A stretch of 64,000 nucleotides of DNA, taken from IMG/VR virus record IMGVR_UViG_3300032242_000723, positions 1-64,000 of that record, one strand, 5' to 3'. Below, one piece after another: positions 13,278 through 39,864 of the stretch (the stretch's first letter is position 1; every line of letters begins with the position of its first letter). The notes beneath the pieces were generated by a model that worked only from the letters and a program-made list of their open reading frames with translations, was not told where the DNA came from and made no database searches. Both the position numbers and the translations under genes were made by a program.

Positions 13278-13343
13278 GCTGATTGCTCCTTATAGCATTA
13301 GAGTAGTTGGGTGTTCCACCACCGTGAACTACATCTTTATTTA
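13278..13343 (-). promoter_or_regulatory. Conserved HEG leader, copy 1 (late promoter + two hairpins + SD)
   Basis: TAAATA AAGAT GTAGTT CAC GGTG gtggaa CACC C AACTAC TCTAA TGCT ataagg AGCA ATCAGC ATG. Confidence 0.85.
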
Positions 13344-13397
13344 GTCTAATAAATAGGTTTGATAAATACATGTAATAACTTATGGAATTAACATATT

Positions 13398-15323
13398 ATG
13401 ACCAGTCAAATCAATACTAATGGAATCAACGTAAACTATCCAGTACCAGGCCAAAACAACTCGTCTCAGCCATTCCGTGACAACTTTGCTCAAATCAAAA
13501 CTCAAATTGATACGGGGGCAACAGAAATCACTGACCTACAAAGCAAAGTTATTCTAAAGGCAGCCCTTAACAATAGTACGCTCAACAACGATATGGGTAA
13601 CACTCAGATCAGTAACTTGTCAACTCGTGGTTTTAGAGCAACAACTTATAACTTAGGTAACTCACTTGCAGGTACAGTTTTAGTTGACGTGAATCGTGCA
13701 GATGTACATTATGGTTCATTAACAGGAAACGTTACATTACAGTTTGGTAACTGGGCTCCAACTAACACCGAAAGCAACGTAGTCGTAAGATTCAATGTTG
13801 CTAATGCAAACGCAGTAATCTCTTTCCCTAGCAGTGTCGTTTCTTCTAATAGCGACTATGGTGTCACACTTCTTGAAAATTATGCTATTATCGCCAACGT
13901 AGCAACAGTGACAGCACCAGCAAACGCTACTATCCTTGAGTATAGATTCTCTACTGTAGATTGTGGAAACACGATCACTGTTGAACCTACTAATAGACCA
14001 TATGTAGCAACACAAATTAAAGACGGTAGCCCAAGTCCAGTAGGTTTTCCCGGTGACACTCCTGGTACAGTATTAACAGATAGTAGCTATATCTATGTGT
14101 GTACTGCAAACTTTGCAGGAACAGTTAATAGTACAAAGACAGTAGCAAATACTTTTGCATCTGGAAATATTATTACACTTAGCAGTACTGCTGGCATAAA
14201 TGTAACTGATCCGATCATCTTCACTGGTAATGTATATGGTGGATTAGTCGCAAACTCAGTATATTATGTAAAGACTGTTAGCTCACCTAACATCACGGTC
14301 TCTACTACTGGATTTGATGGCGTAGTCGGCAATGCATTTGCATTAACAACTGCAAATGGTGCTGGCGTTAGTGCAACTAGCTATAATGGCACTTCAATAT
14401 GGAAAAGAATAGACTTAGCAGGTACAACCGGTAACGATATTGTTACTGGCAATCTTCAAGTAAACTATGCAGCAAACATCGGTACTACTCTTACTGTTGG
14501 TAGTAATATCACAACAACTGGTATCATTGGCATCGGTACATCTGCTCCAGACGCAGAACTTAACATTTTAGCAACGCCACAAACTGTAAGCTATCCAGTA
14601 ACTGGCAATAGCACGACTCTTGGAACAGATTTGCACATATCAGGTGCTGATGGTTCTAATACTCGCATCACACAAGATGCATTTGGCACAGGTAGTTATG
14701 TAGCATTTACTGGTCGTGCAAGTCGAGGTACCGCTGCTAGTCCAACTCAATCTCAATCGGGTGACACGTTAACTCAGTTCACTGCACGTGGATTCAGCAA
14801 CGGAACTTTGCAGTTTGGTAACGTATCAACTGGCCGTGTAGATTTAATAGCAGCAGAAAACTTTACCGATACAAGCCGAGCTACTAATGTAGCGATTTTT
14901 ACGACAGCAACTGGTAGTATTACCCCAACAGTAATGGCAACATTTTCTGGTACTGGTGTAAATATTGTGGGCAACACTCTTGTAACGGGTACAGGTGGAT
15001 TAGGTTACGGTACAGGTTCTGGTGGTGCCATCACTCAGTCTATCAGCAGAACTACAGGCGTTACACTTAACAAGACTAACGGTGCGATCACATTGTTTAC
15101 CGCTGCTGGATCAGCTACAGCTACAACATTCACTGTAACTAACTCAACTGTTGCTGCCACTGATGTCGTGCAAGTCTCAGTTAAATCTGCCACTAATACA
15201 TATCTAGCATTCGTTAGTGCGGTTGCAGCATCTAGCTTTAACATTACCTTCTATACAACAGGTGGTACCGCATCTGATGCTCCAGTATTCAACTTCGCTG
15301 TAATCAAGGCTGTAATCGCATAA
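13398..15323 (+). CDS. Baseplate/tail-fibre protein
   Basis: N-terminal INVNYPVPGQNNSSQPFRDNFAQIK typical of myovirus baseplate/fibre proteins; late promoter GATAAATA at 13361. Confidence 0.7.
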   Translation: MTSQINTNGINVNYPVPGQNNSSQPFRDNFAQIKTQIDTGATEITDLQSKVILKAALNNSTLNNDMGNTQISNLSTRGFRATTYNLGNSLAGTVLVDVNRADVHYGSLTGNVTLQFGNWAPTNTESNVVVRFNVANANAVISFPSSVVSSNSDYGVTLLENYAIIANVATVTAPANATILEYRFSTVDCGNTITVEPTNRPYVATQIKDGSPSPVGFPGDTPGTVLTDSSYIYVCTANFAGTVNSTKTVANTFASGNIITLSSTAGINVTDPIIFTGNVYGGLVANSVYYVKTVSSPNITVSTTGFDGVVGNAFALTTANGAGVSATSYNGTSIWKRIDLAGTTGNDIVTGNLQVNYAANIGTTLTVGSNITTTGIIGIGTSAPDAELNILATPQTVSYPVTGNSTTLGTDLHISGADGSNTRITQDAFGTGSYVAFTGRASRGTAASPTQSQSGDTLTQFTARGFSNGTLQFGNVSTGRVDLIAAENFTDTSRATNVAIFTTATGSITPTVMATFSGTGVNIVGNTLVTGTGGLGYGTGSGGAITQSISRTTGVTLNKTNGAITLFTAAGSATATTFTVTNSTVAATDVVQVSVKSATNTYLAFVSAVAASSFNITFYTTGGTASDAPVFNFAVIKAVIA

Positions 15324-15324
15324 T

Positions 15325-15564
15325 ATGGAACATCCCTTTATTAACGATTTAACAGACAAGACGCTAGAAGAACTTCAAGAAACTGTTGCAAGCTTGATGA
15401 ACAAGTTAACATTTGCATATCGTACTGGTAACGGTCCTCTTATTCAGCAACTGCACATGGTTCTTGAAAGTTACAAAACGCAACAGAGCAAGAAGTTGGA
15501 TGAAGTGTTTGCTAAGCAAAAGATGAAAAATACCATCAATATCAACTCTAACAAAGAAATGTAG
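15325..15564 (+). CDS. Hypothetical helical protein
   Basis: 79-aa ORF abutting the upstream gene. Confidence 0.65.
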   Translation: MEHPFINDLTDKTLEELQETVASLMNKLTFAYRTGNGPLIQQLHMVLESYKTQQSKKLDEVFAKQKMKNTININSNKEM

Positions 15565-15593
15565 TTGACATTCACAACGAAACGTGCTACAGT
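15565..15593 (+). promoter_or_regulatory. Sigma70-type promoter
   Basis: TTGACA-17nt-TACAGT. Confidence 0.7.
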
Positions 15594-15599
15594 CAATCT

Positions 15600-16109: not shown

Positions 16110-16146
16110 CAGTTAATGACAATAAATATATTAAAGGAGAATAATA

Positions 16147-16566: not shown

Positions 16567-16568
16567 CA

Positions 16569-16934: not shown

Positions 16935-16936
16935 AT

Positions 16937-17009
16937 GATAAATACATGTGCTGTAGTTCGCGGGACTCGTAATCCCCAACTACTCTAACGCTTACAAGGA
17001 GCAATCAGC
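16937..17009 (+). promoter_or_regulatory. Conserved HEG leader, copy 2
   Basis: GATAAATA CATGTGCT GTAGTT CGC GGGA ctcgtaa TCCC C AACTAC TCTAA CGCT tacaagg AGCA ATCAGC ATG. Confidence 0.85.
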
Positions 17010-17630
17010 ATGTGTATTTATTGTGGTACCACCAAGCATCGTAAAATCTATGAAAATCATTTCGGTGCAATACCAAAAGATGAAGATGGAAGAACTTATG
17101 AAGTTCATCATGTAGACGGCAATCATTCAAACAATGAATTAGATAATTTGAAAATAGTAAGTATAAAGGAGCATTATGACATACATTATGCTCAAGAAGA
17201 TTATAACGCTTGCTTAAAGATGGGTTATAGAATGAAATTGTCGCCCGAAGAAAAGTCTAGATTAGCAAGTTTAGAAAACTTGAGAAGAGTAGAAAACGGT
17301 ACTCACCCTTTTTTGAATAAAGAAAAAGGCAGAATAGAAAACTTGAGAAGAGTAGAAAACGGTACCCATCATTTCTTGAGCAGCGAGATATCAAAAAGAA
17401 ACAATCAACAAAGAGTAGAAAACGGTACCCATAATTTATTAAATAACAGTTATGCCAAAGAACGACTAAAAAATGGTACTCATAATTTTCAAAGACCTGA
17501 TGCGCCTTCTCAGTTTAAATGGAAATGTGAACACTGTAATAAGGAAGGTAAAAGTAAAGGACTTTTTACTAGATGGCATGGAAATAATTGCAAAAAAAAT
17601 ACGGTCTCCGGATCAGTATTCAACGTCTGA
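17010..17630 (+). CDS. Free-standing HNH homing endonuclease (HEG2)
   Basis: MCIYCGT...YEVHHVDGNHSNNELDNL; four RVENGTHxF repeats; C-terminal WKCEHC...WHGNNC. Confidence 0.88.
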   Translation: MCIYCGTTKHRKIYENHFGAIPKDEDGRTYEVHHVDGNHSNNELDNLKIVSIKEHYDIHYAQEDYNACLKMGYRMKLSPEEKSRLASLENLRRVENGTHPFLNKEKGRIENLRRVENGTHHFLSSEISKRNNQQRVENGTHNLLNNSYAKERLKNGTHNFQRPDAPSQFKWKCEHCNKEGKSKGLFTRWHGNNCKKNTVSGSVFNV

Positions 17631-17640
17631 GTACGATGCC

Positions 17641-17736
17641 GGCGAGAAAGTAATCCGTAAGGTTGATCCAAATGATATTTTATTAATAAGCGAAGAATAC
17701 GTCAACGATTATACGATGACCGATAAGGAATACTAG
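17641..17736 (+). pseudogene. Duplicated 3' end of groES (orphan remnant)
   Basis: Encodes GEKVIRKVDPNDILLISEEYVNDYTMTDKEY*, 30/31 aa identical to groES 16839-16934, with 15 nt differences in 96. Confidence 0.85.
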
Positions 17737-17858
17737 GAAGAACGATACTTGGTACACTGTAATAAATCCAAGCCCCTATAGAAGTCAGAGATGAGAAAGA
17801 TAAACCGCGTAATGATGGCGGCCATCTCTGACAATTCCTCACATTATACCCAATGTCT

Positions 17859-17887: not shown

Positions 17888-17893
17888 GAAATC

Positions 17894-19574: not shown

Positions 19575-20357
19575 TTAAGTATACATCGTTAAAATATGTT
19601 CGATGATTCTATGTCTTCTGATATCCTTTGTATCAAATTCACAAGCAATCATGCCTGGAACGGAATGTTTTTGGATCCTGTGCTTGAGGTCTAACAGCCC
19701 ATTATCGGGTGTTCTACGATCAGTTTGTTCTACATCTCCAGTAATGACTATCTTACTGCCCTCACCAATTCTAGTCATTAGCATTTTCATCTGGCTAGGT
19801 GTAGCGTTCTGTGCTTCATCTAAGATGATCCAACTGTCTTTGAAGTTACGGCCACGGCAGAAAGCGAGTGGTGCAATCTCAATGATTTGTTCTTCAACCA
19901 TACGTTCAAGTTCGTTTGTAGAATAGAACTCTCTTAGTACGTCGAATAGAGGCCTTACCCACGGTTCCATTTTTTCGTTGAGATCGCCAGGTAAGAACCC
20001 ATGCTTCTCATCGTCAACTGCAACTGCAGGTCTAGTTAGTAGTATTTTTTCACAGTCTCCTTGTCTCATAGCTTTTATTGCTGCTAGCATAGCAAGATAC
20101 GTTTTTCCAGTTCCAGCAGGTCCAGAAACCACTACGATATCTGTTTCAGGGTCGGTCAATGCGATGATGTATTTTTCCTGATTTATACTCTGTGGTATTA
20201 GATTGATTGGTTTTCTGTACTGTCTGGATTGTCCTTGGTTAAAGTCGATAGTCTTGGATTCTTTCCTGTAAAAAGTTTTACTTTCGGATTCTTCTGAATA
20301 TCTTCTCGTTGAACGTGTGTCTTTCTGTCTAAGGGCGCTAGTTTTGCGTTTAGTCAC
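19575..20357 (-). CDS. phoH: PhoH family ATPase
   Basis: GPAGTGKT, LTRPAV, GFLPGDLNEK, PLAFCRGRNF, ILDEAQN, TRIGEGSK, GDVEQTD. GTG start at 20357 after SD AGGAGA; TAAATA upstream. Confidence 0.95.
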   Translation of the reverse strand: MTKRKTSALRQKDTRSTRRYSEESESKTFYRKESKTIDFNQGQSRQYRKPINLIPQSINQEKYIIALTDPETDIVVVSGPAGTGKTYLAMLAAIKAMRQGDCEKILLTRPAVAVDDEKHGFLPGDLNEKMEPWVRPLFDVLREFYSTNELERMVEEQIIEIAPLAFCRGRNFKDSWIILDEAQNATPSQMKMLMTRIGEGSKIVITGDVEQTDRRTPDNGLLDLKHRIQKHSVPGMIACEFDTKDIRRHRIIEHILTMYT

Positions 20358-20479
20358 TAATGTTTCTCCTAATTTGATACACTGTTCGAAGACTAGTCTT
20401 GTCTTCACATGTATTTAAAACGATAGGTGTAAGTAAACTATTAGCATGTAGGAATTTGTTTCCTAGCATAAATATTAAT

Positions 20480-21247
20480 CTACGACATCGGGCACGACTT
20501 GCACTTGTTTCCGTGCCATCTCTTATAGTTAGATTTTCCTTTTCCTTCAATGTTGCAATGCTCACATTTCCAAACTGTTTGAGTAGGATGAGTTTCGGTG
20601 ACTGGTTTTAGAAAAGAATGAGTTCCATTATTGACGAGGCATTGTTGTGTGCGTTTCGATATCTCTCCACCTAAAAACGGATGAGTTCCGTCTTCTACCA
20701 TCTGTCTTTGTATATCGCCACTAAGAAAGTGATGGGTACCGTCTGCTATGCGTTTAGCATTAGATTTGCGTTGGACATCTCCGCCTAATAGATGGTGTGT
20801 TCCTGCAGCAACACGAGATAGTTGCACTTTTTTACTCAGTTCACTGCCTCTATCCCCGGAAAAAGGATGAGTTCCGGCAGCAACTCTTTTTATCGCCCTT
20901 GCAGATTGATTTTCTCGATCTAACCAGGGGTGTGTTCCGTCTTTTACCCTTTTGTTGTTGATTTTGGATGCTAGCTCGGATAATTCCGTAGTAGATTTAT
21001 TCATCCTTAATGCAATCGCATAGCAGGCTCCCCAATCAGATTGGTTGTGGTGTATGTCATAATGCTCTTGTATAGGAACGGCGATAAGATTTGTGATGGC
21101 ATCGTTGTGATGATCACCGTCGATATGATGAATATCATATGATCTACCTTCCCCGTCCTTAGGAATGCTACCATGGTGTTTTTTGTATATATTTCTAGCA
21201 AGGTGAGTTAATCTTTTGGGCTGTTTGGGCTTAGAATAAATAGTCAT
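20480..21247 (-). CDS. Free-standing HNH homing endonuclease (HEG3)
   Basis: YDIHHIDGDHHNDAITNL; six GTHxF/W/L repeats; WKCEHC...WHGNKC. Confidence 0.88.
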   Translation of the reverse strand: MTIYSKPKQPKRLTHLARNIYKKHHGSIPKDGEGRSYDIHHIDGDHHNDAITNLIAVPIQEHYDIHHNQSDWGACYAIALRMNKSTTELSELASKINNKRVKDGTHPWLDRENQSARAIKRVAAGTHPFSGDRGSELSKKVQLSRVAAGTHHLLGGDVQRKSNAKRIADGTHHFLSGDIQRQMVEDGTHPFLGGEISKRTQQCLVNNGTHSFLKPVTETHPTQTVWKCEHCNIEGKGKSNYKRWHGNKCKSCPMS

Positions 21248-21316
21248 AGCTGATACTCCTTTACAGTATTAGAGTAGTCGGAGAGGTTAGAGACTCGTGG
21301 ACTACATCTTTATTTA
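21248..21316 (-). promoter_or_regulatory. Conserved HEG leader, copy 3
   Basis: TAAATA AAGAT GTAGTC CAC GAG tctctaacct CTC C GACTAC TCTAA TACT gtaaagg AGTA TCAGCT ATG; compensatory changes in both stems. Confidence 0.85.
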
Positions 21317-21338
21317 GTCAAGAAAGATAAATACTTTT

Positions 21339-21932
21339 ATGAGTGATTTACCAGCAGATAAGTTTTGGAACGATGTGGACTTCGTTAGCATCGTTGACAC
21401 CATCAAAAACATATATATGAGCGATGGCTCCATGTCTACCCTATTGGACTTTGAACGAGTATTAGACGAAGCTGATCTCTATGCATTTAAGAATTGGATC
21501 TTTGGTGAGTTAGTTCAAGGGCCGACAATAGGTAGATATTCAGCAAAGTGTATCTTTATGTGGCCATATAAGATGATGCCTGATCCACGCGGAGCACTTA
21601 GATTGCTTAACGTGGGATGTAAAGTTACATTTGGTAAAGGTCAGCTTGAAGTCCCAGTACAAGTACAAGACTATGAAGACTTTGTACCAGGAACTCGCTA
21701 TCCTAAAATGAAAGAACGTAAAGTTTGGTTCGTTCAAATCCAGATTCCATTCGAGTTAATGGACGATATCAAGGAAGGTTCTATCGATCTTGCTGACTCG
21801 ACTATCGATCTGTCCGATATCGAAGATGCGTACAACGAAGATTTAGACGATTCGACTCAAACTGAAGATTCAGGGCCAGAAACTCAAGCTGATCAAGCTC
21901 AATCTATGGGCGGCATGCCGCCAGCATTGTGA
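21339..21932 (+). CDS. Conserved hypothetical late protein
   Basis: 197 aa with acidic tail; GATAAATA at 21326. Confidence 0.7.
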   Translation: MSDLPADKFWNDVDFVSIVDTIKNIYMSDGSMSTLLDFERVLDEADLYAFKNWIFGELVQGPTIGRYSAKCIFMWPYKMMPDPRGALRLLNVGCKVTFGKGQLEVPVQVQDYEDFVPGTRYPKMKERKVWFVQIQIPFELMDDIKEGSIDLADSTIDLSDIEDAYNEDLDDSTQTEDSGPETQADQAQSMGGMPPAL

Positions 21933-26941: not shown

Positions 26942-27327
26942 TGTCTCAATCTACTACTCTGATCCTGTTCCCACAAACTGCCTATATCAATCCTGGCAAT
27001 GGTGCTCCTTACACTGTAACGAGTAACTCACAACCTGCGGCCGCATATTATCTAGGAAACAGAGACTTGCAAACTGTCAACATCAGTCTAACAAACTGCA
27101 CTGGCAACATCGTGATTGAGGCTACATTAGCAGCAGCACCAGGTGATATTGATTGGTTCAGAGTATTTGAACTTAACGCGAATGCTAATGCTGTAGCAAA
27201 CTCTGCTCCGCAAATCGCATCTAACGCTCGTATGTACACTAACATTGATGGCAACTTTGTTTATATGAGGGCAAAGGTCGAAGACTTCCAAGGTGGCGGC
27301 GTCAATTTTATTAAGTTGTCATATTAA
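26941..27327 (+). CDS. Putative virion protein
   Basis: 128 aa, beta-rich, in a late operon. Confidence 0.6.
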
Positions 27328-27916
27328 GCCTAGTCATTCCAGGATAATATCCGGGCGGGCACTCAATACAGAAAGTAATGGTTACGCCATTTGTAAACCA
27401 CTTCTTTCCCTCTCTAGATTTTCGGATATTATCAATATGTTCCGGTGAATGCGGAATGTTCTTCTTCCATGCACCTTTCTTAGCATTAGTCTCTGCACTT
27501 GCTGGTGGCCTTGCTAATGCTCGTGTACGCTGCTGTTCTTTGAATTCAGGACTACGCTTTCCGTTAGATTTTCCTAACTTGCGGAGGCGCTGTGCTTCTT
27601 TTTGTTCTTGAGATTGTTTCAGTCCGGCTATGCCATCGCCACCATCTGTGCGATTGCGTAATATCCCAGTACCAATATCTTTTCGGCCATACCACCTAAT
27701 CATTCTACGTTCAATCGCTTGGGCACCTATTTCTGATAGATTATGTTCTAGGATTATTATTCTTGACAAATCTTTTGGAGTTTGATATTGTTCATTCTTA
27801 GCATGTTTCCAACGTCTGTCTTTGCCCTTCCCTATATAATAAGGAGTGCCGTCAGTACGCAAATAGGCATACACATAAAACCCTACAGGGTGATTAGGAT
27901 AATGATAAATATTCAT
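27311..27916 (-). CDS. Free-standing GIY-YIG-like homing endonuclease (HEG4)
   Basis: [19 protein letters not shown]...R...H...A..IE..MI..YGR...G.L.N.TDGGDG plus basic C-terminal DNA-binding repeats. Confidence 0.78.
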
Positions 27917-27983
27917 TGCTGATGTTCCTTCTTAGCATTAGAGTAGTTGGGACTGCCATCCGCGAACTACATCTTTATTTATC
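27917..27983 (-). promoter_or_regulatory. Conserved HEG leader, copy 4
   Basis: GATAAATA AAGAT GTAGTT CGC GGAT ggca GTCC C AACTAC TCTAA TGCT aagaagg AACA TCAGCA ATG. Confidence 0.85.
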
Positions 27984-28021
27984 ATTAACTGATAAATATA
28001 TCTAAGAAAAGAGTTACCACA

Positions 28022-28783: not shown

Positions 28784-29898
28784 AGATTCGTGAGATCATC
28801 ACTGAGAGTAAACGATTGAACGAAGGTGTCGGTCGTGAACTACAACATGTTGAAGACATCATATACATTGATGGCCCAGAAGCAGCATTGGAAGTCGTTA
28901 ATCGTTTAGCACAACTTGGTCAAGATTCCAAAACAATGACTATCAAGTGGGACGGAAGTCCTGCTGTGGTGTTTGGTCGTGATGATAGTGGTCAATTCCA
29001 CTTCGGTGATAAACACTCCAAAGAGATGATTACCTCACCCGATGCTATTGCTCAGCTTGTTATGAGCCGTGCTTACAAGGGCAAGGGTGACCCTCAAGTA
29101 GATGCCGATAGAAAGAAGTTCGCAGCATCACAATCACACATTTGGAAGTTATACGAAGCAGCAACACCAAAAGACTTTCGTGGATTTGTCACAGGTGATT
29201 TAATGTGGCAACAAACACCTGAGGTAGTCGGGAACGAGCTAGCTATAGCACCTAACACAGTTCAATACTTTGTTAATCGGTCTACTCCGCTTGGTCAAAA
29301 AATGGCTCGTAGTAAGTCAGGTGTAGCATTACACTTCTACTCTAAGGTCTTTGGTGGAGAAACACAGTCAATCACCCCAGATATTCTTAATCGTCTTGGC
29401 TCAAATGATGTAATCGTATTAGGTCCGAAATCTGTAGCAGAAGCACAAGCTAAGGTAAACACTAAAGAACTTGAAATGCTTGCCGCAACTATCAAGAAGT
29501 CAGCAAAGATAGTCAATGATTATCTGGCACCAATACCTGGTTTGTCTAATATAGCTAATGATATTTACACCTATACTAACTCTAATGCTGACGTGTTAGA
29601 TTCAAAGCACTTCATGGAATGGGCATCTACTAAGTTTACAAGTAAGAAGATGGCTAACTTAGAAGCTAAGGGAACACAGGGACTTGATGCAATATTCAAC
29701 ATCATGCGTCAGTTCATGAAAGTCAAAGTAGATATCATTAATCAGTTAGAAGGTCCTGGTCTAGGTGGAATGGGTATTCGTGCTGTATTGAAGAAGACTG
29801 GTGACAAGGGTGGAGAAGGTTTAGTTGATACCGGATCAGATCAGCCATTGAAGTTTGTTAACCGTGCGACCTTCTCTAAAGCAAACAGGATGCGATAA
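28780..29898 (+). CDS. Ligase/nucleotidyltransferase-like protein with a capsid-targeting-like N-terminus
   Basis: MKIREIITE|S; motif I-like TIKWDGSPA; GDLMW; GEGLV...KFVNR. Confidence 0.6.
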   Translation: MKIREIITESKRLNEGVGRELQHVEDIIYIDGPEAALEVVNRLAQLGQDSKTMTIKWDGSPAVVFGRDDSGQFHFGDKHSKEMITSPDAIAQLVMSRAYKGKGDPQVDADRKKFAASQSHIWKLYEAATPKDFRGFVTGDLMWQQTPEVVGNELAIAPNTVQYFVNRSTPLGQKMARSKSGVALHFYSKVFGGETQSITPDILNRLGSNDVIVLGPKSVAEAQAKVNTKELEMLAATIKKSAKIVNDYLAPIPGLSNIANDIYTYTNSNADVLDSKHFMEWASTKFTSKKMANLEAKGTQGLDAIFNIMRQFMKVKVDIINQLEGPGLGGMGIRAVLKKTGDKGGEGLVDTGSDQPLKFVNRATFSKANRMR

Positions 29899-32675: not shown

Positions 32676-34286
32676 ATGAAAATCAATGACATTTGCGAAA
32701 GCACTACATCAGGTTCAGTTGCAACAGTAGCACAACCAATGACCGGTGGACCACAAAGACGGTCTAATATCGGAACTGGTATCTATCCTGCTAAGCAAGG
32801 CGAAAACTTGTTGATTGGCAAAAAAACTAGTAAGAAGTATGCCAACTCAGTACGAGAAGCATTCGACCTTAAATTTCATGTAGTGCAACTGGCTAAAGAA
32901 CAACTTAATGAGTATTCAGTAAAGTTATTTGACCATTACAATATTAACAAGCATAACCAACGATTTAAACATTTATTGTTACAAATGCACAAGAATCATC
33001 CTATGTTAGAATCGACAGAAAGCGATGAAATTGAACACTTTGTTCAAACTATTGTGAGTTTAAATTCCAAAAAAACAGTTAAAGTTGGTGATATGTTTTC
33101 AGTATTGTCATTTATAATTAATCCAGTTTGGAAAGAAATTGAAGTTATCGGGTTTACGTCTCCTAAAGAAGTTAAAGAAATAAAATCACATTCAGATGGC
33201 TCGATAAATTATATTAGGTTTGCGGACAATGATCGATATCCACGCGTTCCTGTTGCGGCAGTAGGAAAGCACCCGACTCAGCATCCTGCATACTTCATTA
33301 ATGAAAAAGCCGCTGAACAAGCACTATTACGATTGAAATTAATATTACCTGAAACATGGGACATGGATATTAGTTCAGTTAACGATTCAAATTATAGATC
33401 AGGATTAGATGAGGATAACATGAAAATCAACGATATCTACGAAAGTAAGAGAATAAAAGAAGCACACCTAGACGAAGAAGAGTTGATCATTGTACCAGGT
33501 CAAGGTCATAACAAAAAGTCAGGCTTCATCCCGCATAAGGAAGATCGTCGCGATCATGAAGTTTCAATGGCTCGTAGTGATTTGTTCCAGGCAGCAAAGA
33601 ATGCGAAACAGACCTTTGAAATGCTTGAAGGTGTATCTGAAGATGAAGGCATCGAAGGCTGGGTCCAAGCCAAGATCACTAAAGCAGCAGACTATCTAGC
33701 CACTGTTCGTGAATATCTTGAGGGTAAACAAGTTCAAGGTATGGCAGAAGCAGGATCTAGGTCTTTCGGAGGCATTTCAACTGCAACATCAAGAGCGAAA
33801 CAAGCATCTATGTTTGTTCATGACCCAGATCGTGCAGCGACTAATTATAAAGCTAACAAGTATGATCCAGAAACTGGGCTAGGAGGATATGTTGCTCCAC
33901 ATGTTTACAATAAATCACAGGAATCAAACATTATGATTCAGTTAAATAAAAATCTTAATCCTAATAAAGCGTCACCACTGACCTTTAAGGACGAAAGTAC
34001 ACTAAGAATTACACCCAGGGTTGCACAAGAAGTATTAGATAAACTTAACGCAATGAAGCCTGTAGAAAAGCACGAAACAGTTAAAAATCTTATGATGTCA
34101 AAAGATAACTTTATCAACTTTGCAAAGGTAAAAACTGAAGGTGCTAAAGTTGATCGTATGGTCAAACATGTTGAGAAGTCTGAAGAAAAATCTGGCAAGT
34201 CAAAGAAAGAAGCTGAAAACATTGCATGGGCAACCTTGAATAAAAGAGGTTATCTAGACAATGCAAACCGCAAGAACAAAAAATAA
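32676..34286 (+). CDS. Modular putative capsid-internal polyprotein
   Basis: MKINDICE|S start, a second MKINDIYE|S at 33420, many xxE-bounded modules; GATAAATA at 32645. Confidence 0.7.
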   Translation: MKINDICESTTSGSVATVAQPMTGGPQRRSNIGTGIYPAKQGENLLIGKKTSKKYANSVREAFDLKFHVVQLAKEQLNEYSVKLFDHYNINKHNQRFKHLLLQMHKNHPMLESTESDEIEHFVQTIVSLNSKKTVKVGDMFSVLSFIINPVWKEIEVIGFTSPKEVKEIKSHSDGSINYIRFADNDRYPRVPVAAVGKHPTQHPAYFINEKAAEQALLRLKLILPETWDMDISSVNDSNYRSGLDEDNMKINDIYESKRIKEAHLDEEELIIVPGQGHNKKSGFIPHKEDRRDHEVSMARSDLFQAAKNAKQTFEMLEGVSEDEGIEGWVQAKITKAADYLATVREYLEGKQVQGMAEAGSRSFGGISTATSRAKQASMFVHDPDRAATNYKANKYDPETGLGGYVAPHVYNKSQESNIMIQLNKNLNPNKASPLTFKDESTLRITPRVAQEVLDKLNAMKPVEKHETVKNLMMSKDNFINFAKVKTEGAKVDRMVKHVEKSEEKSGKSKKEAENIAWATLNKRGYLDNANRKNKK

Positions 34287-34287
34287 G

Positions 34288-34911
34288 TTAAACTTTGTTT
34301 TTTCTAGCTTTACAGTTTGAACCATGCCATCTATGATATGATGCTAAGTTTTTTCCTTCTTTATCGCAAGTTTCGCATTTCCACAGTTGCATAAAGTTAT
34401 GTGTACCCTTCTCTATGCGGTCATTGTTAATAGTTGGTCCTAAAAAATGGTGTGACCCGTTTTCTACTCTTTTTTTGTTAATATCCGGACCGATGAAGTT
34501 GTGGGTCCCCTCAGAAATACGCTTTGCATTTGCTTTGCGTTGTATTTCGCCACTTAGTAAATGATGTTTGCCTTCAGCTACTAATCTTCTTTGTATTTCT
34601 CCACCTAATAAATGGTGTGTCCCGTTAGTTACTCTTTCTGTTTGGCTTTGTTTGGCCAGTTCTGATATTTCAGCAGGTGATAATGCCATTCTAGATGACA
34701 TTCTAAGACAAGCAGCATAGTCCCCGCGAGAATAGTGGATATCATAGTGTTCTTGAATAGTTACACACTTCAAGTTCATCGGATCATTATTTGAATGGTT
34801 ACCGTCTATATGATGGATTTCGTAACTACGATTATTGTCGTCTTTTGGAATAGGTCCATTGTGTTGTTCGTATATTCTACGATACTTGGTAGTGCCACAA
34901 TAAATACACAT
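34288..34911 (-). CDS. Free-standing HNH homing endonuclease (HEG5)
   Basis: True start MCIYCGT at 34911; YEIHHIDGNHSNNDPMNL; five G(T/K/S)HxF/L repeats; WKCETC...WHGSNC. Confidence 0.88.
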   Translation of the reverse strand: MCIYCGTTKYRRIYEQHNGPIPKDDNNRSYEIHHIDGNHSNNDPMNLKCVTIQEHYDIHYSRGDYAACLRMSSRMALSPAEISELAKQSQTERVTNGTHHLLGGEIQRRLVAEGKHHLLSGEIQRKANAKRISEGTHNFIGPDINKKRVENGSHHFLGPTINNDRIEKGTHNFMQLWKCETCDKEGKNLASYHRWHGSNCKARKNKV

Positions 34912-34977
34912 GCTGATTGCTCCTTTAAGCATTAGAGTAGTTGGGACGGCCATCCGCGAACTACATCTTTATTTATC
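34912..34977 (-). promoter_or_regulatory. Conserved HEG leader, copy 5
   Basis: GATAAATA AAGAT GTAGTT CGC GGAT ggcc GTCC C AACTAC TCTAA TGCT taaagg AGCA ATCAGC ATG. Confidence 0.85.
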
Positions 34978-35028
34978 ACCGTGACGATAAATACAGACAC
35001 AATAAGAATCATGTAAAGGGTAAGTAAT

Positions 35029-36861: not shown

Positions 36862-38129
36862 TGAGATTCCGTGAGTTCCTGATAGAGTATAGTAGAGCCA
36901 AAACCGCTGAAATGGTTGGGGATAAACTCATCTTGGCCTTAGGTAATGAACGGCGTCCTCCTGTGAATCTAACAAGTATACGAGATTCAATAAAAATGGG
37001 CCCTAGCTGGTGGAACGCTGATCCTGATAGGATGAAGATTTGGACTGATGCTATTCTCGGTGCCATTGAAGATAAAGACCCAACCCCTAACAAGGCATAT
37101 ACTCCCTGGTTAGCAAGAATGTATGCCAAAGGTGGCCTCAAGCTGGAAGACATCAATCGCAATGACTTACTTGGTCTATATGACATTGCCAAAAAGCGTA
37201 GAATGCTTAAGCCAGAACACAATGACATCAACAGTTTCAAAACCTATAAAGATTTTGAAGATATGTTGCTAATCGGTGGTCATTATAACCTTGATGATAT
37301 CCAAAACAGTAATAAAAAAGAAGAAAAAGGCCAGGCATCTAAAGTATATGAAGACAGTGATGTAGTTGTTATTGTACCACAAGACGAAGCAGCCGCATGT
37401 CGTTATGGCCGTGGTACTCGTTGGTGTACTGCTTCTACAAGAGGTCAAAACTATTTTGACCATTATAATCGTCAGGGTAGAATGTATATCTTGCTCCCGA
37501 AAAACCCAGAACACGAAGGTGAGAAGTATCAACTTCACTTCCAATCACAACAGTATATGAACGAGGATGATGACCAGGTTAACTTAGTAAATCTAATCAG
37601 TAAGCGTTTTCCAAATCTTCTTGAGTTCTTTTTGGCTATACCAAACTCTGGTCTCAAAGGTGATCTTAGATTTACTGACCCAGAAGTTATCCAGGATGTA
37701 TTAGATAAGATAAGAGAAGTTGGCAATGACTGGATAAGTGAAAAGGTTAATGACGCGGAAGCCGATGATTACGACTATTACCACGAAATGGCTGAACGAT
37801 ACCCTGATCCTGATGAAGAAGGTAGTGTTGATTGGGATGCTGTTCATAAAGCAGGAGATGATTACCTGCAATATAATGATTATTTGAAAGAACTAGTAGA
37901 CGGGTTAACTACTGTATTAGAGACATCCGTAGATGATATAAAAGAATATGTCAATGACGAGCCCTTTGCCGGTCTTGACAGTTTTGAAATCAGAAATATC
38001 CCGAATATTATAGAAGAGATAGCATTATATAGTCACTATGGTTATAAGAAAAATACAATGTTCACTGAGTTCTTTAAACATCTTGATGTTGTTCGCAAAG
38101 GCGACGAATGGCAGGCAAGAGCAATATGA
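36861..38129 (+). CDS. PcfJ-like-domain protein with a capsid-targeting-like N-terminus
   Basis: MRFREFLIE|Y; YTPWLARMY; VIVPQDEAAACRYGRGTRWCTAS...YFDHY...KYQLHF. Confidence 0.6.
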   Translation: MRFREFLIEYSRAKTAEMVGDKLILALGNERRPPVNLTSIRDSIKMGPSWWNADPDRMKIWTDAILGAIEDKDPTPNKAYTPWLARMYAKGGLKLEDINRNDLLGLYDIAKKRRMLKPEHNDINSFKTYKDFEDMLLIGGHYNLDDIQNSNKKEEKGQASKVYEDSDVVVIVPQDEAAACRYGRGTRWCTASTRGQNYFDHYNRQGRMYILLPKNPEHEGEKYQLHFQSQQYMNEDDDQVNLVNLISKRFPNLLEFFLAIPNSGLKGDLRFTDPEVIQDVLDKIREVGNDWISEKVNDAEADDYDYYHEMAERYPDPDEEGSVDWDAVHKAGDDYLQYNDYLKELVDGLTTVLETSVDDIKEYVNDEPFAGLDSFEIRNIPNIIEEIALYSHYGYKKNTMFTEFFKHLDVVRKGDEWQARAI

Positions 38130-38968
38130 GAGCAAACGAGTTCATAACCGAGTCCACACCAACAAGACTTAAAGACCTATGCACAGTGAAGACTAACTTT
38201 CCGGATGCTGACTTCTGGCTACAACGCAATGGTAATGAGACTACAGTTGGTACACCAGTCAAGACATTCTCTCCAGACAACATTGGAATCAAAGTCACAG
38301 CCACCGAAGTATTAGATCCAAAATATCTATACTATATGATGATGCATATTCAAAACACAGGTTACTGGAAAGCAAGAGCAAAGGGGGCATTAAGCCTTGT
38401 TCATATCAAAGCAAGTGATGTTGCTAATATGTTAGTTGGTAGTAACTCAGTAGAAGAAAGCAGTGGTCTGCCTTCACCAGGTACATATGAACAAGAGTAT
38501 GGTCGTTTCCAGAGTAAAGGACCCAAGCGTCTTACTGCGATGACAAACGAGGCATTGGATTCTAAGCCATATGAGTACACTACTCAAATATCTGACGATT
38601 ACCATATGTATAAGTTCAATACTGATAATAACCTAAAATATGACACTTGCATATCTATAATAGGCGGCGAACGACAATCCGGAATTGAAGTTGAGTTCAA
38701 CCTGTTGATGGATGGCGACAGATATATTGGTATTCAAAACACGGGTGATGCTCGTAGAGTACTTGCTACTGTCATTGATATCATCAAGAAGTATGCTATT
38801 GAAAATAAGCCAAGATGGATTGCATTCACCGCTAGGGAGCGTAGTAGGATCCAACTATATGATGCATTGGTCAAGAGATTAGACAGAGAACTACCCGACT
38901 ATGAGTTAAAGTCAGATGTGATGCGATGGTCTGGTAAAAAATATATACTGAAACTGAAGGAAAAATAA
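38126..38968 (+). CDS. Modular putative capsid cargo; N-terminal module resembles a Type I HsdS TRD fragment
   Basis: MRANEFITE|S; LKDLCTVKT...VLDPKYLYYMM...G...LVHIK..DV; C-terminal TGDARRVLATV...IAFTA..RSRIQLY module. Confidence 0.55.
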   Translation: MRANEFITESTPTRLKDLCTVKTNFPDADFWLQRNGNETTVGTPVKTFSPDNIGIKVTATEVLDPKYLYYMMMHIQNTGYWKARAKGALSLVHIKASDVANMLVGSNSVEESSGLPSPGTYEQEYGRFQSKGPKRLTAMTNEALDSKPYEYTTQISDDYHMYKFNTDNNLKYDTCISIIGGERQSGIEVEFNLLMDGDRYIGIQNTGDARRVLATVIDIIKKYAIENKPRWIAFTARERSRIQLYDALVKRLDRELPDYELKSDVMRWSGKKYILKLKEK

Positions 38969-38970
38969 AA

Positions 38971-39204
38971 ATGAATCCATGGGTAGAAAAAGTTATGATA
39001 GCAATCATCCCGTTATTACTATCGGGAATCGTATACCTGTTTAGTACAGTTACATCACTTAAGTCTGATGTACAGTTGATACAATCTCAGTCAGCATTAG
39101 CAAGACTACAAATGAAGGTAGATTTAAGCAACGAAATAGCAACCAATAGAGAGCGTATCATAAGTTTAGAGGAACAGGTAAAAGAGCTACAATCTAAGCA
39201 ATGA
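38971..39204 (+). CDS. Small membrane-anchored coiled-coil protein
   Basis: N-terminal TM segment followed by a heptad-rich tail. Confidence 0.6.
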   Translation: MNPWVEKVMIAIIPLLLSGIVYLFSTVTSLKSDVQLIQSQSALARLQMKVDLSNEIATNRERIISLEEQVKELQSKQ

Positions 39205-39796
39205 CCCAGTCATTGACCATACTTATGCGTTTCTTAAAAAGTCCTCTTACTTTTTGTATATTGATGTTATATTGTGTAGCAAAGTTAAGAGGGGTACAGT
39301 TGACCTCTTCACCAGTAACAGTATTCTTAAAATGATACTCAGTTCTGTTGTACCGAGAATTGTTTGACCCTGATTGATCTCTCTTGTTGAAGCTGGCCGC
39401 ATGTTCTGGAGGAAAGAACCGTCCCTTTCTCCACCCAATTGGTATTTCATCGTCCTGTTGTATCTTTTTGTTAGAGATGTCGTTAGTTATCCAAATCGTG
39501 CCATACATCGGATTTCTTTCACCTGTATTAGACAACTTAGCCAACCGCGACTTTTCTTCTGGTGAAATTTGCATCCGCCCCGCCATTATGAGGCATGCTT
39601 TATGATCGCCCTGTTCAAAATGAATGGCATAATGTTCTTTGATTGTTACACAGATTAGATTAGACAACTCGTTGTTGTTATGATTCCCATCTACATGATG
39701 GATTTCGTATGAGCGGCCTTCCTCGTCTTTAGGAATAGGTCCGAAATGATTCTCATATATTAAACGATGGTACTGGGTGCCGCAATAAATACACAT
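39194..39796 (-). CDS. Free-standing HNH homing endonuclease (HEG6)
   Basis: True start MCIYCGT at 39796; YEIHHVDGNHNNNELSNL; NPMYG..WITN...GWRKGR tail. Confidence 0.88.
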   Translation of the reverse strand: MCIYCGTQYHRLIYENHFGPIPKDEEGRSYEIHHVDGNHNNNELSNLICVTIKEHYAIHFEQGDHKACLIMAGRMQISPEEKSRLAKLSNTGERNPMYGTIWITNDISNKKIQQDDEIPIGWRKGRFFPPEHAASFNKRDQSGSNNSRYNRTEYHFKNTVTGEEVNCTPLNFATQYNINIQKVRGLFKKRISMVNDWVIA

Positions 39797-39864
39797 GCTG
39801 ATTGCTCCTTTAAGCATTAGAGTAGTTGGAGATTACCGTCTCGCGAACTACATCTGTATTTATC
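39797..39864 (-). promoter_or_regulatory. Conserved HEG leader, copy 6
   Basis: GATAAATA CAGAT GTAGTT CGC GAGA cggtaa TCTC C AACTAC TCTAA TGCT taaagg AGCA ATCAGC ATG. Confidence 0.85.

What the first reader, a model, noticed from the sequence alone, without database searches (positions are those of the whole stretch)
13278..39864. Six-copy covarying structured RNA leader shared by HNH and GIY-YIG endonuclease genes
Seen: every free-standing endonuclease gene (13278-13343 -, 16937-17009 +, 21248-21316 -, 27917-27983 -, 34912-34977 -, 39797-39864 -) is preceded by TAAATA-N5-8-GTAGTY-CRC-[stem]-loop-[stem']-C-RACTAC-TCTAA-YRCT-(N)AAGG-ARYA-(A)TCAGC-(N)-ATG. P1 covaries (GTAGTT/AACTAC to GTAGTC/GACTAC) and in five copies extends by AGA/TCT around a bulged U. 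The inner stem changes freely while keeping its pairing (GGTG/CACC, GGGA/TCCC, GAG/CTC, GGAT/GTCC twice, GAGA/TCTC). The SD-containing hairpin also covaries (TGCT/AGCA to TACT/AGTA). The asymmetric CRC/C internal loop is invariant apart from one purine. Established: T4-type HEGs use an RBS-sequestering hairpin that the late promoter bypasses, and those hairpins are gene-specific. Here the promoter lies upstream of the whole structure, and one motif spans two unrelated nuclease folds. Inference: a cis-regulatory ncRNA (protein-binding operator or switch), or a portable expression cassette onto which nuclease ORFs are swapped. I do not recognise it as a catalogued motif.
Basis: partly seen in the sequence, partly recalled or inferred. 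Interest (0 to 1): 0.85.

Follow-up and report, generated by a model that had tools for sequence, protein, structure and literature searches.

The report
Portable two-strand RNA control module of homing endonucleases
Every homing-endonuclease gene in this jumbo-phage window starts with the same ~85-bp module, common in uncultured phages and swapped between unrelated nucleases, whose folding pattern points to a small antisense RNA that would hold the nuclease in check.

Summary
There are six copies at the stated coordinates and no others in the window. Five precede HNH genes and one precedes a GIY-YIG gene. The motif is not private to this genome. It occurs in about 200 or more IMG/VR contigs, in four MAG contigs and in one cultured phage (Rhizobium phage RHph_I1_18). 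It always sits in front of free-standing nucleases: two HNH types, several GIY-YIG groups and a TnsA/Vsr-like family. P1 covaries massively, with all four Watson-Crick types and more than 98% of cells paired. Identical P1 alleles sit on unrelated nucleases, so the module is portable. Rfam has no match.

(1) TATTTA, the inverted late-promoter hexamer, is conserved about 5 nt after UCAGC in three different reading frames. (2) The invariant UCUAA and UCAGC blocks pair with each other only on the strand opposite the gene: 807/810 cells pair there, against 251 A·C mismatches on the mRNA strand.

Best model (confidence about 0.5): convergent late promoters produce the nuclease mRNA leader plus a ~65-75-nt cis-antisense RNA. 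This is like IS10 RNA-OUT or IS200 art200. No transcript has been observed. A 2009 metagenome paper probably glimpsed the hairpin.

The parts
13262..13345 (-). Module copy c1. TAAATA 13343-13338; P1 13332-13303; UCUAA 13302-13298; UCAGC 13282-13278; ATG 13277-13275; inverted TATTTA 13272-13267.
   Evidence: (105 bits)
16937..17025 (+). Module copy c2, the only one on the + strand, with an 8-nt promoter-P1 spacer. TAAATA 16939-16944; P1 16953-16983; UCUAA 16984-16988; UCAGC 17005-17009; ATG 17010-17012; TATTTA 17015-17020.
   Evidence: (90 bits)
21232..21318 (-). Module copy c3, with the GTAGTC/GACTAC P1 variant. TAAATA 21316-21311; P1 21305-21274; UCUAA 21273-21269; UCAGC 21253-21249; ATG 21247-21245; TATTTA 21242-21237.
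   Evidence: (84 bits)
27901..27983 (-). Module copy c4, in front of the GIY-YIG gene. TAAATA 27981-27976; P1 27970-27943; UCUAA 27942-27938; UCAGC 27922-27918; ATG 27916-27914; TATTTA 27911-27906.
   Evidence: (83 bits)
34896..34977 (-). Module copy c5. TAAATA 34975-34970; P1 34964-34937; UCUAA 34936-34932; SD/inner helix 34931-34918; UCAGC 34916-34912; ATG 34911-34909; TATTTA 34906-34901. Promoter plus P1 differ from c4 by one loop base.
   Evidence: (99 bits)
39781..39864 (-). Module copy c6. TAAATA 39862-39857; P1 39851-39822; UCUAA 39821-39817; UCAGC 39801-39797; ATG 39796-39794; TATTTA 39791-39786.
   Evidence: (106 bits)
12558..13277 (-). HNH_3 homing endonuclease gene (239 aa) served by c1.
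   Evidence: (E 1.5e-12)
17010..17630 (+). HNH_3 homing endonuclease gene (206 aa) served by c2.
   Evidence: (E 1.2e-10)
20480..21247 (-). HNH_3 homing endonuclease gene (255 aa) served by c3. It is followed on the same strand by PhoH (19575-20408).
   Evidence: E 5.4e-8; PhoH E 1.9e-70
27311..27916 (-). GIY-YIG homing endonuclease gene (201 aa) served by c4.
34288..34911 (-). HNH_3 homing endonuclease gene (207 aa) served by c5. The true start is 34911; the ORF lister starts it at an in-frame ATG inside the P1 loop.
   Evidence: E 7.8e-13
39194..39796 (-). HNH_3 homing endonuclease gene (200 aa) served by c6. The true start is 39796.
   Evidence: E 5.3e-13
34912..34975 (+). Predicted cis-antisense RNA of c5. 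It would start at the G opposite the C of UCAGC, 5 nt after the inverted TAAATA. It has a 5' hairpin (CUGAU.GCU / AGC.AUUAG) whose loop carries CUCCUU, then the P1 complement, then a U-rich tail. Equivalent spans: 13278-13343(+), 21249-21316(+), 27918-27981(+), 39797-39862(+), 17009-16939(-).
   Evidence: Inference only: no transcript data.
34986..34993 (+). GATAAATA promoter-like site of the neighbouring + strand gene, back-to-back with the HEG promoter (8-nt gap). The same arrangement occurs at 13361-13368, 21326-21333, 27991-27998 and 39872-39879.

Best explanation
The six elements are copies of a portable ~85-bp expression-and-restraint module that travels with free-standing homing endonuclease genes (HEGs) in phages using T4-type late promoters. 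On the gene strand it supplies three things: a late promoter (TAAATA); a hairpin P1 that begins at the predicted transcription start; and a Shine-Dalgarno sequence, start codon and short helix. On the opposite strand, an inverted copy of the same promoter hexamer lies in codons 2-4 of the nuclease gene. It would start a ~65-75-nt RNA that folds into two hairpins. The first is formed by the invariant UCAGC and UCUAA blocks, with the anti-SD-like CUCCUU in its loop. The second is the complement of P1, followed by a U-rich tail (the complement of the sense promoter and its A-rich spacer) that acts as terminator. This antisense RNA is fully complementary to the SD and start region of the nuclease mRNA. 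It would hold translation of a potentially toxic nuclease down, as RNA-OUT does for IS10 transposase and art200 for IS200.

Shown: the structure, its covariation, its strand bias, the promoter-like hexamers and their spacing, and the modular exchange between nuclease families.

Inferred: that both promoters fire, that the P1 complement terminates transcription, and that pairing represses translation.
For: (1) Real and widespread. A pattern with P1 left free hits 103. There are 4 MAG contigs and one cultured phage copy (R2 43 bits).

(2) Features the search pattern did not require are still conserved. TAAATA lies exactly 5 nt before P1 in 102/119 copies. TATTTA lies 4-6 nt after YCAGY in 112/116, at offsets 3, 4 and 5 from the start codon depending on nuclease family. 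It persists where the ATG lies upstream of UCAGC. So it is a nucleotide-level signal, not a protein-level one.

(3) P1 covariation. In the diverse set 98.5-99.6% of cells are paired, with all four Watson-Crick types at the middle pairs, and 0/500 shuffles reach the score. A MAFFT + RNAalifold alignment that was not fitted to a model confirms it.

(4) Strand. In the UCUAA(Y)/(R)YCAGC helix 807/810 cells pair on the antisense strand (G.U 159, 17 and 75 at pairs 3, 4 and 5). On the sense strand 251 of those cells are A.C mismatches. Double compensatory changes occur at pairs 1, 4 and 5; the cultured-phage copy (sequence) also reads G-C at pair 4. All 5 pairs form in 150/151 copies on the antisense strand, against 3-4 of 5 on the sense strand. 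The unfitted antisense alignment has 99.3% of cells paired over 14 pairs. Mean MFE is -16.3 kcal/mol antisense against -12.6 sense. For the UCUAA..UCAGC part it is -6.9 against -2.5, and the antisense fold is more stable in 152/152 copies. Non-Watson-Crick cells in P1 are 7 A.C against 1 G.U on the sense strand.

(5) A U-rich tail follows the P1 complement: 6.3 U of 10 nt, and 5.4 of 10 where the promoter is not adjacent, against a background of about 3.

(6) The first P1 base is a purine (G-C 51, A-U 5), while the other pairs vary freely. This fits a transcription start there.

(7) These HEGs need their own promoter. Both neighbours point the other way in 43/93 loci and the same way in 13/93.

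(8) Portability. Identical P1 alleles sit on different nuclease groups in 17/18 cases.

(9) The phage's own genes use GATAAATA with short unstructured leaders. Rak2-like relatives (DNA polymerase 41-48% identity) have a predicted ATAAATA late promoter and a gp55-like sigma factor (PMC5259590).
Against: No transcript, 5' end or terminator has been observed for either strand.

The simple terminator scan does not flag the P1 complement, because its stem is interrupted by the internal loop and the base of the stem is only moderately G+C rich.

The U-rich tail is confounded with the sense promoter, which is itself A/T-only.

Most outer-helix positions are invariant. The strand call therefore rests mainly on C/U transitions at two positions, a handful of double changes, and thermodynamics. 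The sequences are related, so p-values are inflated.

A short sense-strand helix that pairs part of the SD with U.G pairs can also be drawn, so the mRNA fold may matter as well.

TATTTA could have another role.

The conserved 3x1 internal loop (CRC/Y) is not explained specifically by this model.
Confidence: 0.5

Rival explanations
1. Sense-only leader. The late transcript starts at P1, whose 5'-terminal hairpin protects the mRNA from 5'-end-dependent decay. A small hairpin partly masks the SD to keep translation low. The inverted TATTTA and the antisense-biased pairing are by-products.
For: The 5-nt promoter-P1 spacing. Purine-only first P1 base. An inner helix that can pair GGAG with CUUU. 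HEGs mostly lack read-through transcription from neighbours. The principle of 5' stabiliser hairpins (E. coli ompA) is established knowledge.
Against: It does not explain why TATTTA is kept in three reading frames. It does not explain why UCUAA and UCAGC are invariant and mutually complementary only with G.U on the other strand. It does not explain why G.U is nearly absent from P1. In one subgroup P1 is 16-21 nt from TAAATA, so it is not at the 5' end there.
Confidence: 0.25
2. Protein-binding operator. A common trans-acting factor, phage or host, recognises the conserved internal loop (U-CRC-G / C-Y-A) and the UCUAA of the mRNA and regulates all HEGs together.
For: The internal loop and flanking pairs stay constant while both stems change completely. 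One motif serves many nuclease families, so a shared factor is conceivable.
Against: No candidate protein was identified. The strand bias of the UCUAA/UCAGC helix points away from the mRNA. Bulges and internal loops are also typical of antisense RNA stems. Mutual information gives no evidence of alternative conformers or a pseudoknot.
Confidence: 0.1
3. Host-strand element. Most of these HEGs are inverted relative to their neighbours, so the 'antisense' structure lies on the phage's own coding strand. It would serve as insulator or terminator plus an outward-facing promoter that keeps the downstream phage gene expressed. This would favour retention of the HEG, as embedded promoters do in T4 segG.
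For: Both neighbours are opposite in 43/93 loci. In 37/56 loci the divergent neighbour has no TATTTA of its own in the gap. T4 HEGs embed promoters for downstream genes (PMC2988022).
Against: A terminator between the outward promoter and the gene it should drive is self-defeating. In the window all five inverted copies have a separate neighbour promoter. The module is unchanged in co-oriented HEGs (c2; 13/93 loci).
Confidence: 0.1
4. T4-type bypass. In read-through RNA the promoter AUAAAUA pairs with UAUUUAU after the start codon and closes a three-way junction that blocks initiation. Late transcripts lack the 5' arm and are translated.
For: The two hexamers are exact complements at both ends of the leader. 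The logic is established for I-TevI, segB and Aeh1 mobE (PMC2988022).
Against: Predicted pairing probability is only 0.41 on average. Predicted SD and AUG accessibility is the same in read-through and late RNA. Variants of TATTTA (TACTTA, TATTTG) show no compensating promoter change. Most copies are inverted relative to upstream genes, so read-through RNA of that strand should be rare.
Confidence: 0.04
5. No function: the leaders are similar only because the genes are paralogues that duplicated with their 5' ends.
For: The five HNH genes of the window are paralogues with a shared N-terminus MCIYCG.
Against: The same leader precedes unrelated folds: GIY-YIG, two HNH types and TnsA-like. The stems change with full compensation. 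The leader is far better conserved than the 35-49% identical proteins. Identical P1 alleles sit on different nuclease groups.
Confidence: 0.01

Closest known systems
T4-type translational control of homing endonuclease genes (I-TevI, I-TevII, I-TevIII, segB, Aeh1 mobE)
   Same: A late promoter of the TATAAATA type and an RNA structure at the 5' end of a phage HEG that touches the ribosome binding site. The purpose is late, low expression (PMC2988022).
   Different: In T4 each hairpin is gene-specific, and the late promoter lies inside it so that late RNA escapes. Most of those HEGs ride on upstream transcripts. Here one covarying motif serves many nuclease families. The sense promoter lies 5 nt upstream of the structure. 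Most HEGs are inverted relative to their neighbours. The best-formed structure is on the opposite strand.
Conserved hairpins upstream of free-standing HEGs in 'fractured genes' of metagenomes (Dassa et al. 2009, PMC2677866)
   Same: Hairpins in 15/16 5' UTRs of GIY-YIG and Vsr-like HEGs; TATAAATA in ten of them; two conserved motifs that pair in the stem; freshwater and marine phage-like loci. My set also contains a HEG that splits a large terminase gene (L066) and TnsA/Vsr-like nucleases.
   Different: That paper gives no sequence in its text, and its figures and supplements are not held, so identity could not be checked. It interpreted the hairpin as an Aeh1-like RBS trap. It made no covariation, strand, antisense-promoter or modular-exchange analysis, and no Rfam family resulted.
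Cis-antisense control of mobile-element genes: IS10 RNA-IN/RNA-OUT, IS200 tnpA/art200, hok/sok, CopA/CopT (from my own knowledge, not retrieved here)
   Same: A convergent promoter inside the 5' end of the gene. A ~70-nt structured antisense RNA covers the SD and start codon. Complementary hairpin loops are suited to a kissing contact. Stems are interrupted by bulges. The regulated product is a DNA-cutting or toxic protein of a selfish element.
   Different: Those are bacterial IS or plasmid systems using sigma-70 promoters. Here both promoters would be phage late promoters, and the terminator tail of the antisense RNA is the complement of the sense promoter. The module is shared by many unrelated genes. 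No experiment exists.
PeSL promoter/stem-loop cassettes of T4-type phages (PMC2839356, PMC4122927)
   Same: Short conserved promoter-plus-hairpin units that flank variable genes and mediate modular shuffling.
   Different: PeSLs combine a terminator with an early sigma-70-type promoter. They are not specific to HEGs and have no reported compensatory covariation or internal-loop signature.

Membership tests
T4-type HEG regulatory hairpin with late-promoter bypass | The hairpin sequesters the Shine-Dalgarno sequence. | tested here: inconclusive
   A 3-6-bp inner helix can pair part of GGAG with CUUU by U.G pairs. It is weak: mean -2.5 kcal/mol for the whole UCUAA..UCAGC stretch on the sense strand.
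T4-type HEG regulatory hairpin with late-promoter bypass | The late promoter lies within or after the 5' arm, so late transcripts cannot form the hairpin. | tested here: not met
   TAAATA lies 5 nt upstream of P1 in 102/119 copies. Both hairpins would be present in late RNA. The only helix the promoter could bypass (AUAAAUA/UAUUUAU) is poorly supported.
T4-type HEG regulatory hairpin with late-promoter bypass | The HEG is embedded in early or middle polycistronic transcripts of the same strand. | tested here: not met
   Both neighbours are on the opposite strand in 43/93 loci and on the same strand in 13/93. In the window 5 of 6 copies are inverted.
Cis-antisense RNA control (IS10 RNA-OUT / IS200 art200 / hok-sok type) | A convergent promoter inside the 5' part of the regulated gene. 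| tested here: met
   This holds at sequence level only. The inverted TAAATA is present in 112/116 copies, independent of frame, and lies 5 nt from a G in 86/116 copies, the same spacing as the sense promoter. Promoter activity is not testable here.
Cis-antisense RNA control (IS10 RNA-OUT / IS200 art200 / hok-sok type) | The antisense transcript has its own conserved secondary structure, with evidence for that strand. | tested here: met
   807/810 outer-helix cells pair on the antisense strand, against 251 A.C mismatches on the sense strand. 99.3% of cells pair on the unfitted alignment. The antisense fold is more stable in 134/152 copies overall and in 152/152 for the 5' hairpin.
Cis-antisense RNA control (IS10 RNA-OUT / IS200 art200 / hok-sok type) | A defined 3' end (intrinsic terminator). 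| tested here: inconclusive
   The P1 complement is followed by a tail with 6.3 U in 10 nt, but the consensus terminator scan does not flag it.
Cis-antisense RNA control (IS10 RNA-OUT / IS200 art200 / hok-sok type) | The antisense RNA exists and represses the target in vivo. | not testable with these tools
   No transcriptome or reporter data are available.
Any Rfam 15 family | A score at or above the family's gathering threshold. | tested here: not met
   No hits in the window or in six diverse loci. At E<10 on the leader, the only hit is a 14-bit chance match to TLS-PK5.
PeSL cassettes | An early (sigma-70-type) promoter joined to a terminator stem-loop. | tested here: not met
   The promoter here is the late-type TAAATA. 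Sigma-70-like sites in a 14-kb stretch covering three of the copies are not enriched: 34 found against 37.5 expected.
PeSL cassettes | It mediates exchange of unrelated genes. | tested here: met
   In 17/18 recurrent P1 alleles the same allele is attached to different nuclease groups.
Dassa 2009 HEG hairpin motif | The same sequence motifs (their motifs 1 and 2). | not testable with these tools
   The motif sequences appear only in figures and supplements that are not held. The context matches.

The most novel reading that the evidence does not exclude
The conserved loop and helix make the antisense RNA a shared, trans-acting currency. The RNA made by any one homing endonuclease module would repress every nuclease mRNA carrying the module, in the same genome or in a co-infecting phage. 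This would amount to multicopy inhibition, or even competition between selfish elements. The variable P1 stems and loops would set specificity classes, as in plasmid incompatibility groups.
Probability: 0.15. Interest if true: 0.85.

Novelty: new variant of a known kind. Interest (0 to 1): 0.7.

Why it matters
Homing endonucleases are the commonest selfish genes of large phages. How they are kept harmless is known only for a few T4 and Aeh1 genes, each with its own hairpin. Here a single, strongly covarying ~85-bp module is shared by about 200 or more uncultured phage contigs and at least four nuclease families, and is visibly exchanged between them. If the antisense reading is right, it would be the first RNA-antisense control described for phage homing endonucleases, as far as my searches show. 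It would also be a compact example of two promoters, two RNAs and a terminator packed into one palindromic unit. The motif is a ready candidate for a new RNA family. It can serve as a marker for annotating unrecognised HEGs: the copy in Rhizobium phage RHph_I1_18 precedes a gene annotated as a 'hypothetical protein'. It is experimentally tractable, because that phage and its host are cultured.

Tried and rejected
- Megablast of 8.5 kb of the window against 50,697 phage records found no match. Blastn with three different leaders found only chance hits, apart from RHph_I1_18. BLAST is insensitive to this motif, so its absence from other isolates is not established.
- Rfam found nothing.
- A mutual-information scan for pseudoknots or loop contacts found only the nested helices.
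- The AUAAAUA/UAUUUAU 'P0' helix has mean pairing probability 0.41 and makes no difference to SD or AUG accessibility. I set it aside.
- I first read the 98 U.G pairs in the inner helix as proof of a sense-strand structure. I withdrew this once the outer helix showed the opposite bias. Those U.G pairs are optional extensions between loop U's and SD G's.
- The terminator consensus scan does not flag the P1 complement.
- A Bacteroidota host was hinted at by 4/4 MAG bins, but the one cultured copy is in a Rhizobium phage, so host range stays open.
- A text search for the motif strings returned only unrelated primers.
- There are no further copies in the first 50 kb of RHph_I1_18, although a Seg-like HEG lies there. 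The module is therefore not universal to HEGs. The remaining two-thirds of that genome beyond the copy's own 5-kb locus were not scanned.
- No intein signal was found around the split terminase of L066.
- I looked for a gene interrupted by a stop among the six HEGs. All are intact.
- The metagenome-contig scan was not used, because the viral collection gave enough.

Full report
**1. The observation**

Each copy has TAAATA, a short spacer, a hairpin P1, and then UCUAA. P1 has a six-pair lower stem, an asymmetric CRC/C internal loop and a variable upper stem. After UCUAA come a short helix around AAGGAG, UCAGC and ATG.

- The exact 11-mer RACTACTCTAA occurs six times in the window and only there.
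- Two covariance models, one from the six copies and one from 96 diverse relatives, were run over the whole window with filters off. They find the six copies at 70-106 bits and nothing else above 17 bits.
- Five downstream genes are HNH_3 nucleases and are paralogues at 35-49% identity.
- The sixth gene has no Pfam hit. It carries the GIY-YIG residue pattern. Its best PDB profile match is a GIY-YIG protein. Its predicted N-domain (pLDDT 82-94) matches only GIY-YIG domains among the ten best structures.
- Profile and BLAST searches of all six-frame ORFs found no further HEG in the window. All six genes are intact.

**2. The genome**

The window has about 41% G+C. It encodes a family-B DNA polymerase, a clamp loader, PhoH and a Clp-like protease. 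The polymerase is 41-48% identical to those of the Rak2/Atu_ph07-like jumbo phages. Nothing similar exists at DNA level among isolates.

GATAAATA is four-fold enriched: 15 sites against 3.5 expected. It precedes the phage's own + strand genes, which have short unstructured leaders. For this phage group, ATAAATA has been predicted as the late promoter, and a gp55-like sigma factor is encoded (PMC5259590). The structured leader is therefore specific to the HEGs, not to late genes in general.

**3. The motif is widespread and modular**

It also hit four MAG contigs.
- In 119 distinct copies, features the pattern did not demand were nevertheless there. TAAATA lies exactly 5 nt upstream of P1 in 102 copies. 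YCAGY follows 14-17 nt after UCUAA. TATTTA lies 4-6 nt further on in 112 of 116.
- A second pattern left P1 free and hit 103 contigs. It showed that the lower P1 stem can be any sequence as long as it pairs. Examples are GTTGGT/ACCAAC, GTCCTT/AAGGAC and ATCAGC/GCTGAT. The internal loop U-CRC-G / C-Y-A and the UCUAA stay constant.
- On the model-fitted alignments, 98.5-99.7% of lower-stem cells and 97-99.6% of upper-stem cells pair. All four Watson-Crick types occur at the middle positions. No shuffle out of 500 reaches the covariation score.
- An independent MAFFT + RNAalifold run predicts the same helix.
- The downstream genes fall into HNH_3-type HNH, classical HNH with NUMOD3, at least three GIY-YIG-like groups and a DUF7487/TnsA-like family.
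- In 17 of 18 P1 alleles seen more than once, the identical 33-37-nt sequence is attached to different nuclease groups. In the window, the GIY-YIG copy c4 and the HNH copy c5 share promoter and P1 except for one loop base.
- One cultured phage carries a copy: Rhizobium phage RHph_I1_18. The copy lies upstream of a gene annotated as a hypothetical protein, whose N-terminus MTIYQPYTYLIGW looks like the GIY-YIG-like group (Pfam gives no hit). That phage encodes a late sigma factor.

**4.

(a) TATTTA just inside the ORF is the exact inverse of the promoter hexamer. It lies at offset 5 from the ATG in HNH_3 and GIY-YIG genes (M-x-I-Y). It lies at offsets 3 or 4 in classical HNH genes (M-Y-L, M-I-F-I). 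It persists where the start codon lies upstream of UCAGC. It is therefore kept at nucleotide level. Its distance to the C of UCAGC is 5 nt in 86/116 copies, the same as the distance from the sense TAAATA to the first G of P1.

(b) Folding the opposite strand showed that CUGAU (the complement of AUCAG) pairs with AUUAG (the complement of CUAAU). I counted all 162 distinct copies.
- On the antisense strand the five pairs are: C-G 160 / U-A 2; U-A 161; G.U 159 / A-U 3; A-U 143 / G.U 17 / U-A 2; and U-A 62 / U.G 75 / C-G 17 / G-C 2 / A-U 4.
- That is 807 of 810 cells paired on the antisense strand. On the mRNA strand 251 of the same cells are A.C mismatches.
- Pair 5 walks from U-A through U.G to C-G. 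That path is legal only on the antisense strand.
- G at the 3' partner occurs only with C opposite (16/16).
- Rare variants show double changes at pairs 1 and 4. The RHph_I1_18 copy has G-C at pair 4.
- A MAFFT alignment of the antisense strand, not fitted to any model, gives 99.3% paired cells over 14 pairs.
- The antisense fold is more stable in 134 of 152 copies (-16.3 against -12.6 kcal/mol). For the UCUAA..UCAGC part it is more stable in 152 of 152 (-6.9 against -2.5).
- In P1 itself almost every pair is Watson-Crick. The few exceptions lean the same way: 7 A.C against 1 G.U on the sense strand.
- After the P1 complement, the antisense strand carries a U-rich tail. It has 6.3 U in 10 nt, and 5.4 in 10 even where the sense promoter is further away.

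**5. The model**

The simplest reading of all this is a palindromically organised unit: TAAATA-N5-[G...C]-N5-TATTTA. It contains two convergent late promoters about 75 bp apart.

The gene-strand transcript begins at P1. The first P1 base is G in 51 and A in 5 of 57 diverse copies, while the other pairs vary freely. This transcript carries the SD and the start codon.

The opposite transcript would be a 65-75-nt RNA. Its 5' hairpin loop holds CUCCUU, the complement of the SD. Its 3' hairpin plus U tail would terminate it. It is fully complementary to the translation initiation region of the nuclease mRNA.

Both RNAs present complementary hairpin loops, and their stems are interrupted by an internal loop. 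This is the classical layout of antisense control (IS10 RNA-OUT, IS200 art200, hok/sok, CopA/CopT; from my own knowledge). The biological rationale is the same as for the T4 HEG hairpins: keep a DNA-cutting selfish gene late and low.

These HEGs mostly sit inverted relative to their neighbours: 43/93 loci have both neighbours opposite, and 13/93 have both the same. They therefore cannot use the T4 solution of riding on, and hiding in, upstream transcripts (PMC2988022).

I rate this model at about 0.5. Every step beyond sequence and structure statistics is inference. The terminator scan does not flag the P1 complement, and the U tail is confounded with the A/T-only promoter.

**6. Rivals**

- A sense-only stabiliser-plus-SD-mask leader (0.25) explains spacing and orientation. 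It does not explain TATTTA, the strand bias or the invariance of UCUAA and UCAGC.
- A protein operator (0.1) would explain the constant internal loop, but it has no candidate protein and no strand support.
- A host-strand insulator with an outward promoter (0.1) fits the inverted orientation and the T4 precedent of embedded promoters. However, it places a terminator in front of the gene to be driven.
- The T4-like bypass through an AUAAAUA/UAUUUAU helix is thermodynamically weak and changes nothing at the SD.
- Mere paralogy is excluded.

**7. Comparison with what is known**

No Rfam family matches. The motif strings do not occur in searchable literature.

The closest published observation is Dassa et al. 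2009 (PMC2677866). They found hairpins with two mutually complementary conserved motifs and TATAAATA upstream of GIY-YIG and Vsr-like free-standing HEGs in ocean and lake metagenomes, and read them as an Aeh1-like RBS trap. My set contains the same kinds of loci: a terminase split by a leader-bearing HEG and TnsA/Vsr-like nucleases. It is likely, but unverifiable here, that they saw P1.

PeSL cassettes are a conceptual relative for the shuffling aspect.

I therefore class the finding as a new variant of a known kind. HEG 5' regulatory RNA is known, and antisense control of selfish genes is known. A family-wide, portable, two-strand module for phage HEGs is not.

**8. Verdict**

Interest is 0.7.

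Noticed in passing
window 13361-13368, 21326-21333, 27991-27998, 34986-34993, 39872-39879 (+): Each inverted HEG promoter sits back-to-back with the GATAAATA of the neighbouring + strand gene, only 7-17 nt away (TATTTATC-N-GATAAATA). The same divergent pair is seen in 22/119 related loci.
   Followed up: partly
window 21326-21341 (+): GATAAATA lies only 5 nt before the ATG of gene 21339-21932. If transcription starts about 6 nt after the hexamer, as in T4, this mRNA would be leaderless. A similar site at 29894 overlaps the stop codon of the upstream gene and may be fortuitous.
   Followed up: no
window 19575-20408 (-): PhoH is the only non-HEG gene on the minus strand in this region. It lies directly downstream of HEG c3, with a 71-nt gap and no TAAATA of its own on that strand, so it may be transcribed from the HEG module's promoter.
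   Followed up: no
window 12558-12561, 27311-27327, 39194-39204, 34286-34288: The 3' ends of the inverted HEGs abut or overlap the 3' ends of the convergent phage genes (overlaps of 4, 17 and 11 nt; one 1-nt gap). The insertions are extremely tight.
   Followed up: no
L066:3694-6385: A leader-bearing GIY-YIG-like HEG splits a large terminase into a Terminase_6N ORF and a Terminase_6C ORF and overlaps the latter by 23 nt. No intein signal was found. This is a 'fractured gene' like Aeh1 nrdA/mobE.
   Followed up: partly
L223:2501-3196 (MN988519.1 80289-80984): The cultured Rhizobium phage RHph_I1_18 has one module copy upstream of EVB91_137. That gene is annotated 'hypothetical protein', starts with TTG, and looks like an unrecognised GIY-YIG-type HEG inverted relative to its neighbours. 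There are no further copies in the first 50 kb of that genome, although a Seg-like HEG lies there.
   Followed up: partly
L121-L124 (genome contigs): All four MAG contigs carrying the motif are binned with Bacteroidota (Mucilaginibacter, Bacteroides, Bacteroidetes, Haliscomenobacter). This is a possible host hint for part of the family. It contrasts with the Rhizobium isolate and with the proteobacterial hosts of the nearest polymerase relatives.
   Followed up: no
L128, L142, L156, L162, L191, L192, L211, L213, L216 (coordinates): In one subgroup TAAATA is 16-21 nt from P1, and a conserved (G)TCAA(T/C)AAAAAT run abuts P1 instead. This is either a variant promoter or a pure A-tract, which would be a U-tract on the other strand.
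   Followed up: partly
L006:716-795, L111: These are module copies with an intact promoter and P1 but a degenerate downstream part and no nuclease ORF. They are probable relics of lost HEGs.
   Followed up: no
window 34951-34953 and 39815-39817 (-): The leaders of c5 and c6 are open in the nuclease frame from an upstream ATG (in the P1 loop in c5, in the UCUAAUGCU stretch after P1 in c6). Mechanical ORF calling therefore extends these genes by 14 and 7 codons. Annotators would probably mis-start such genes.
   Followed up: yes
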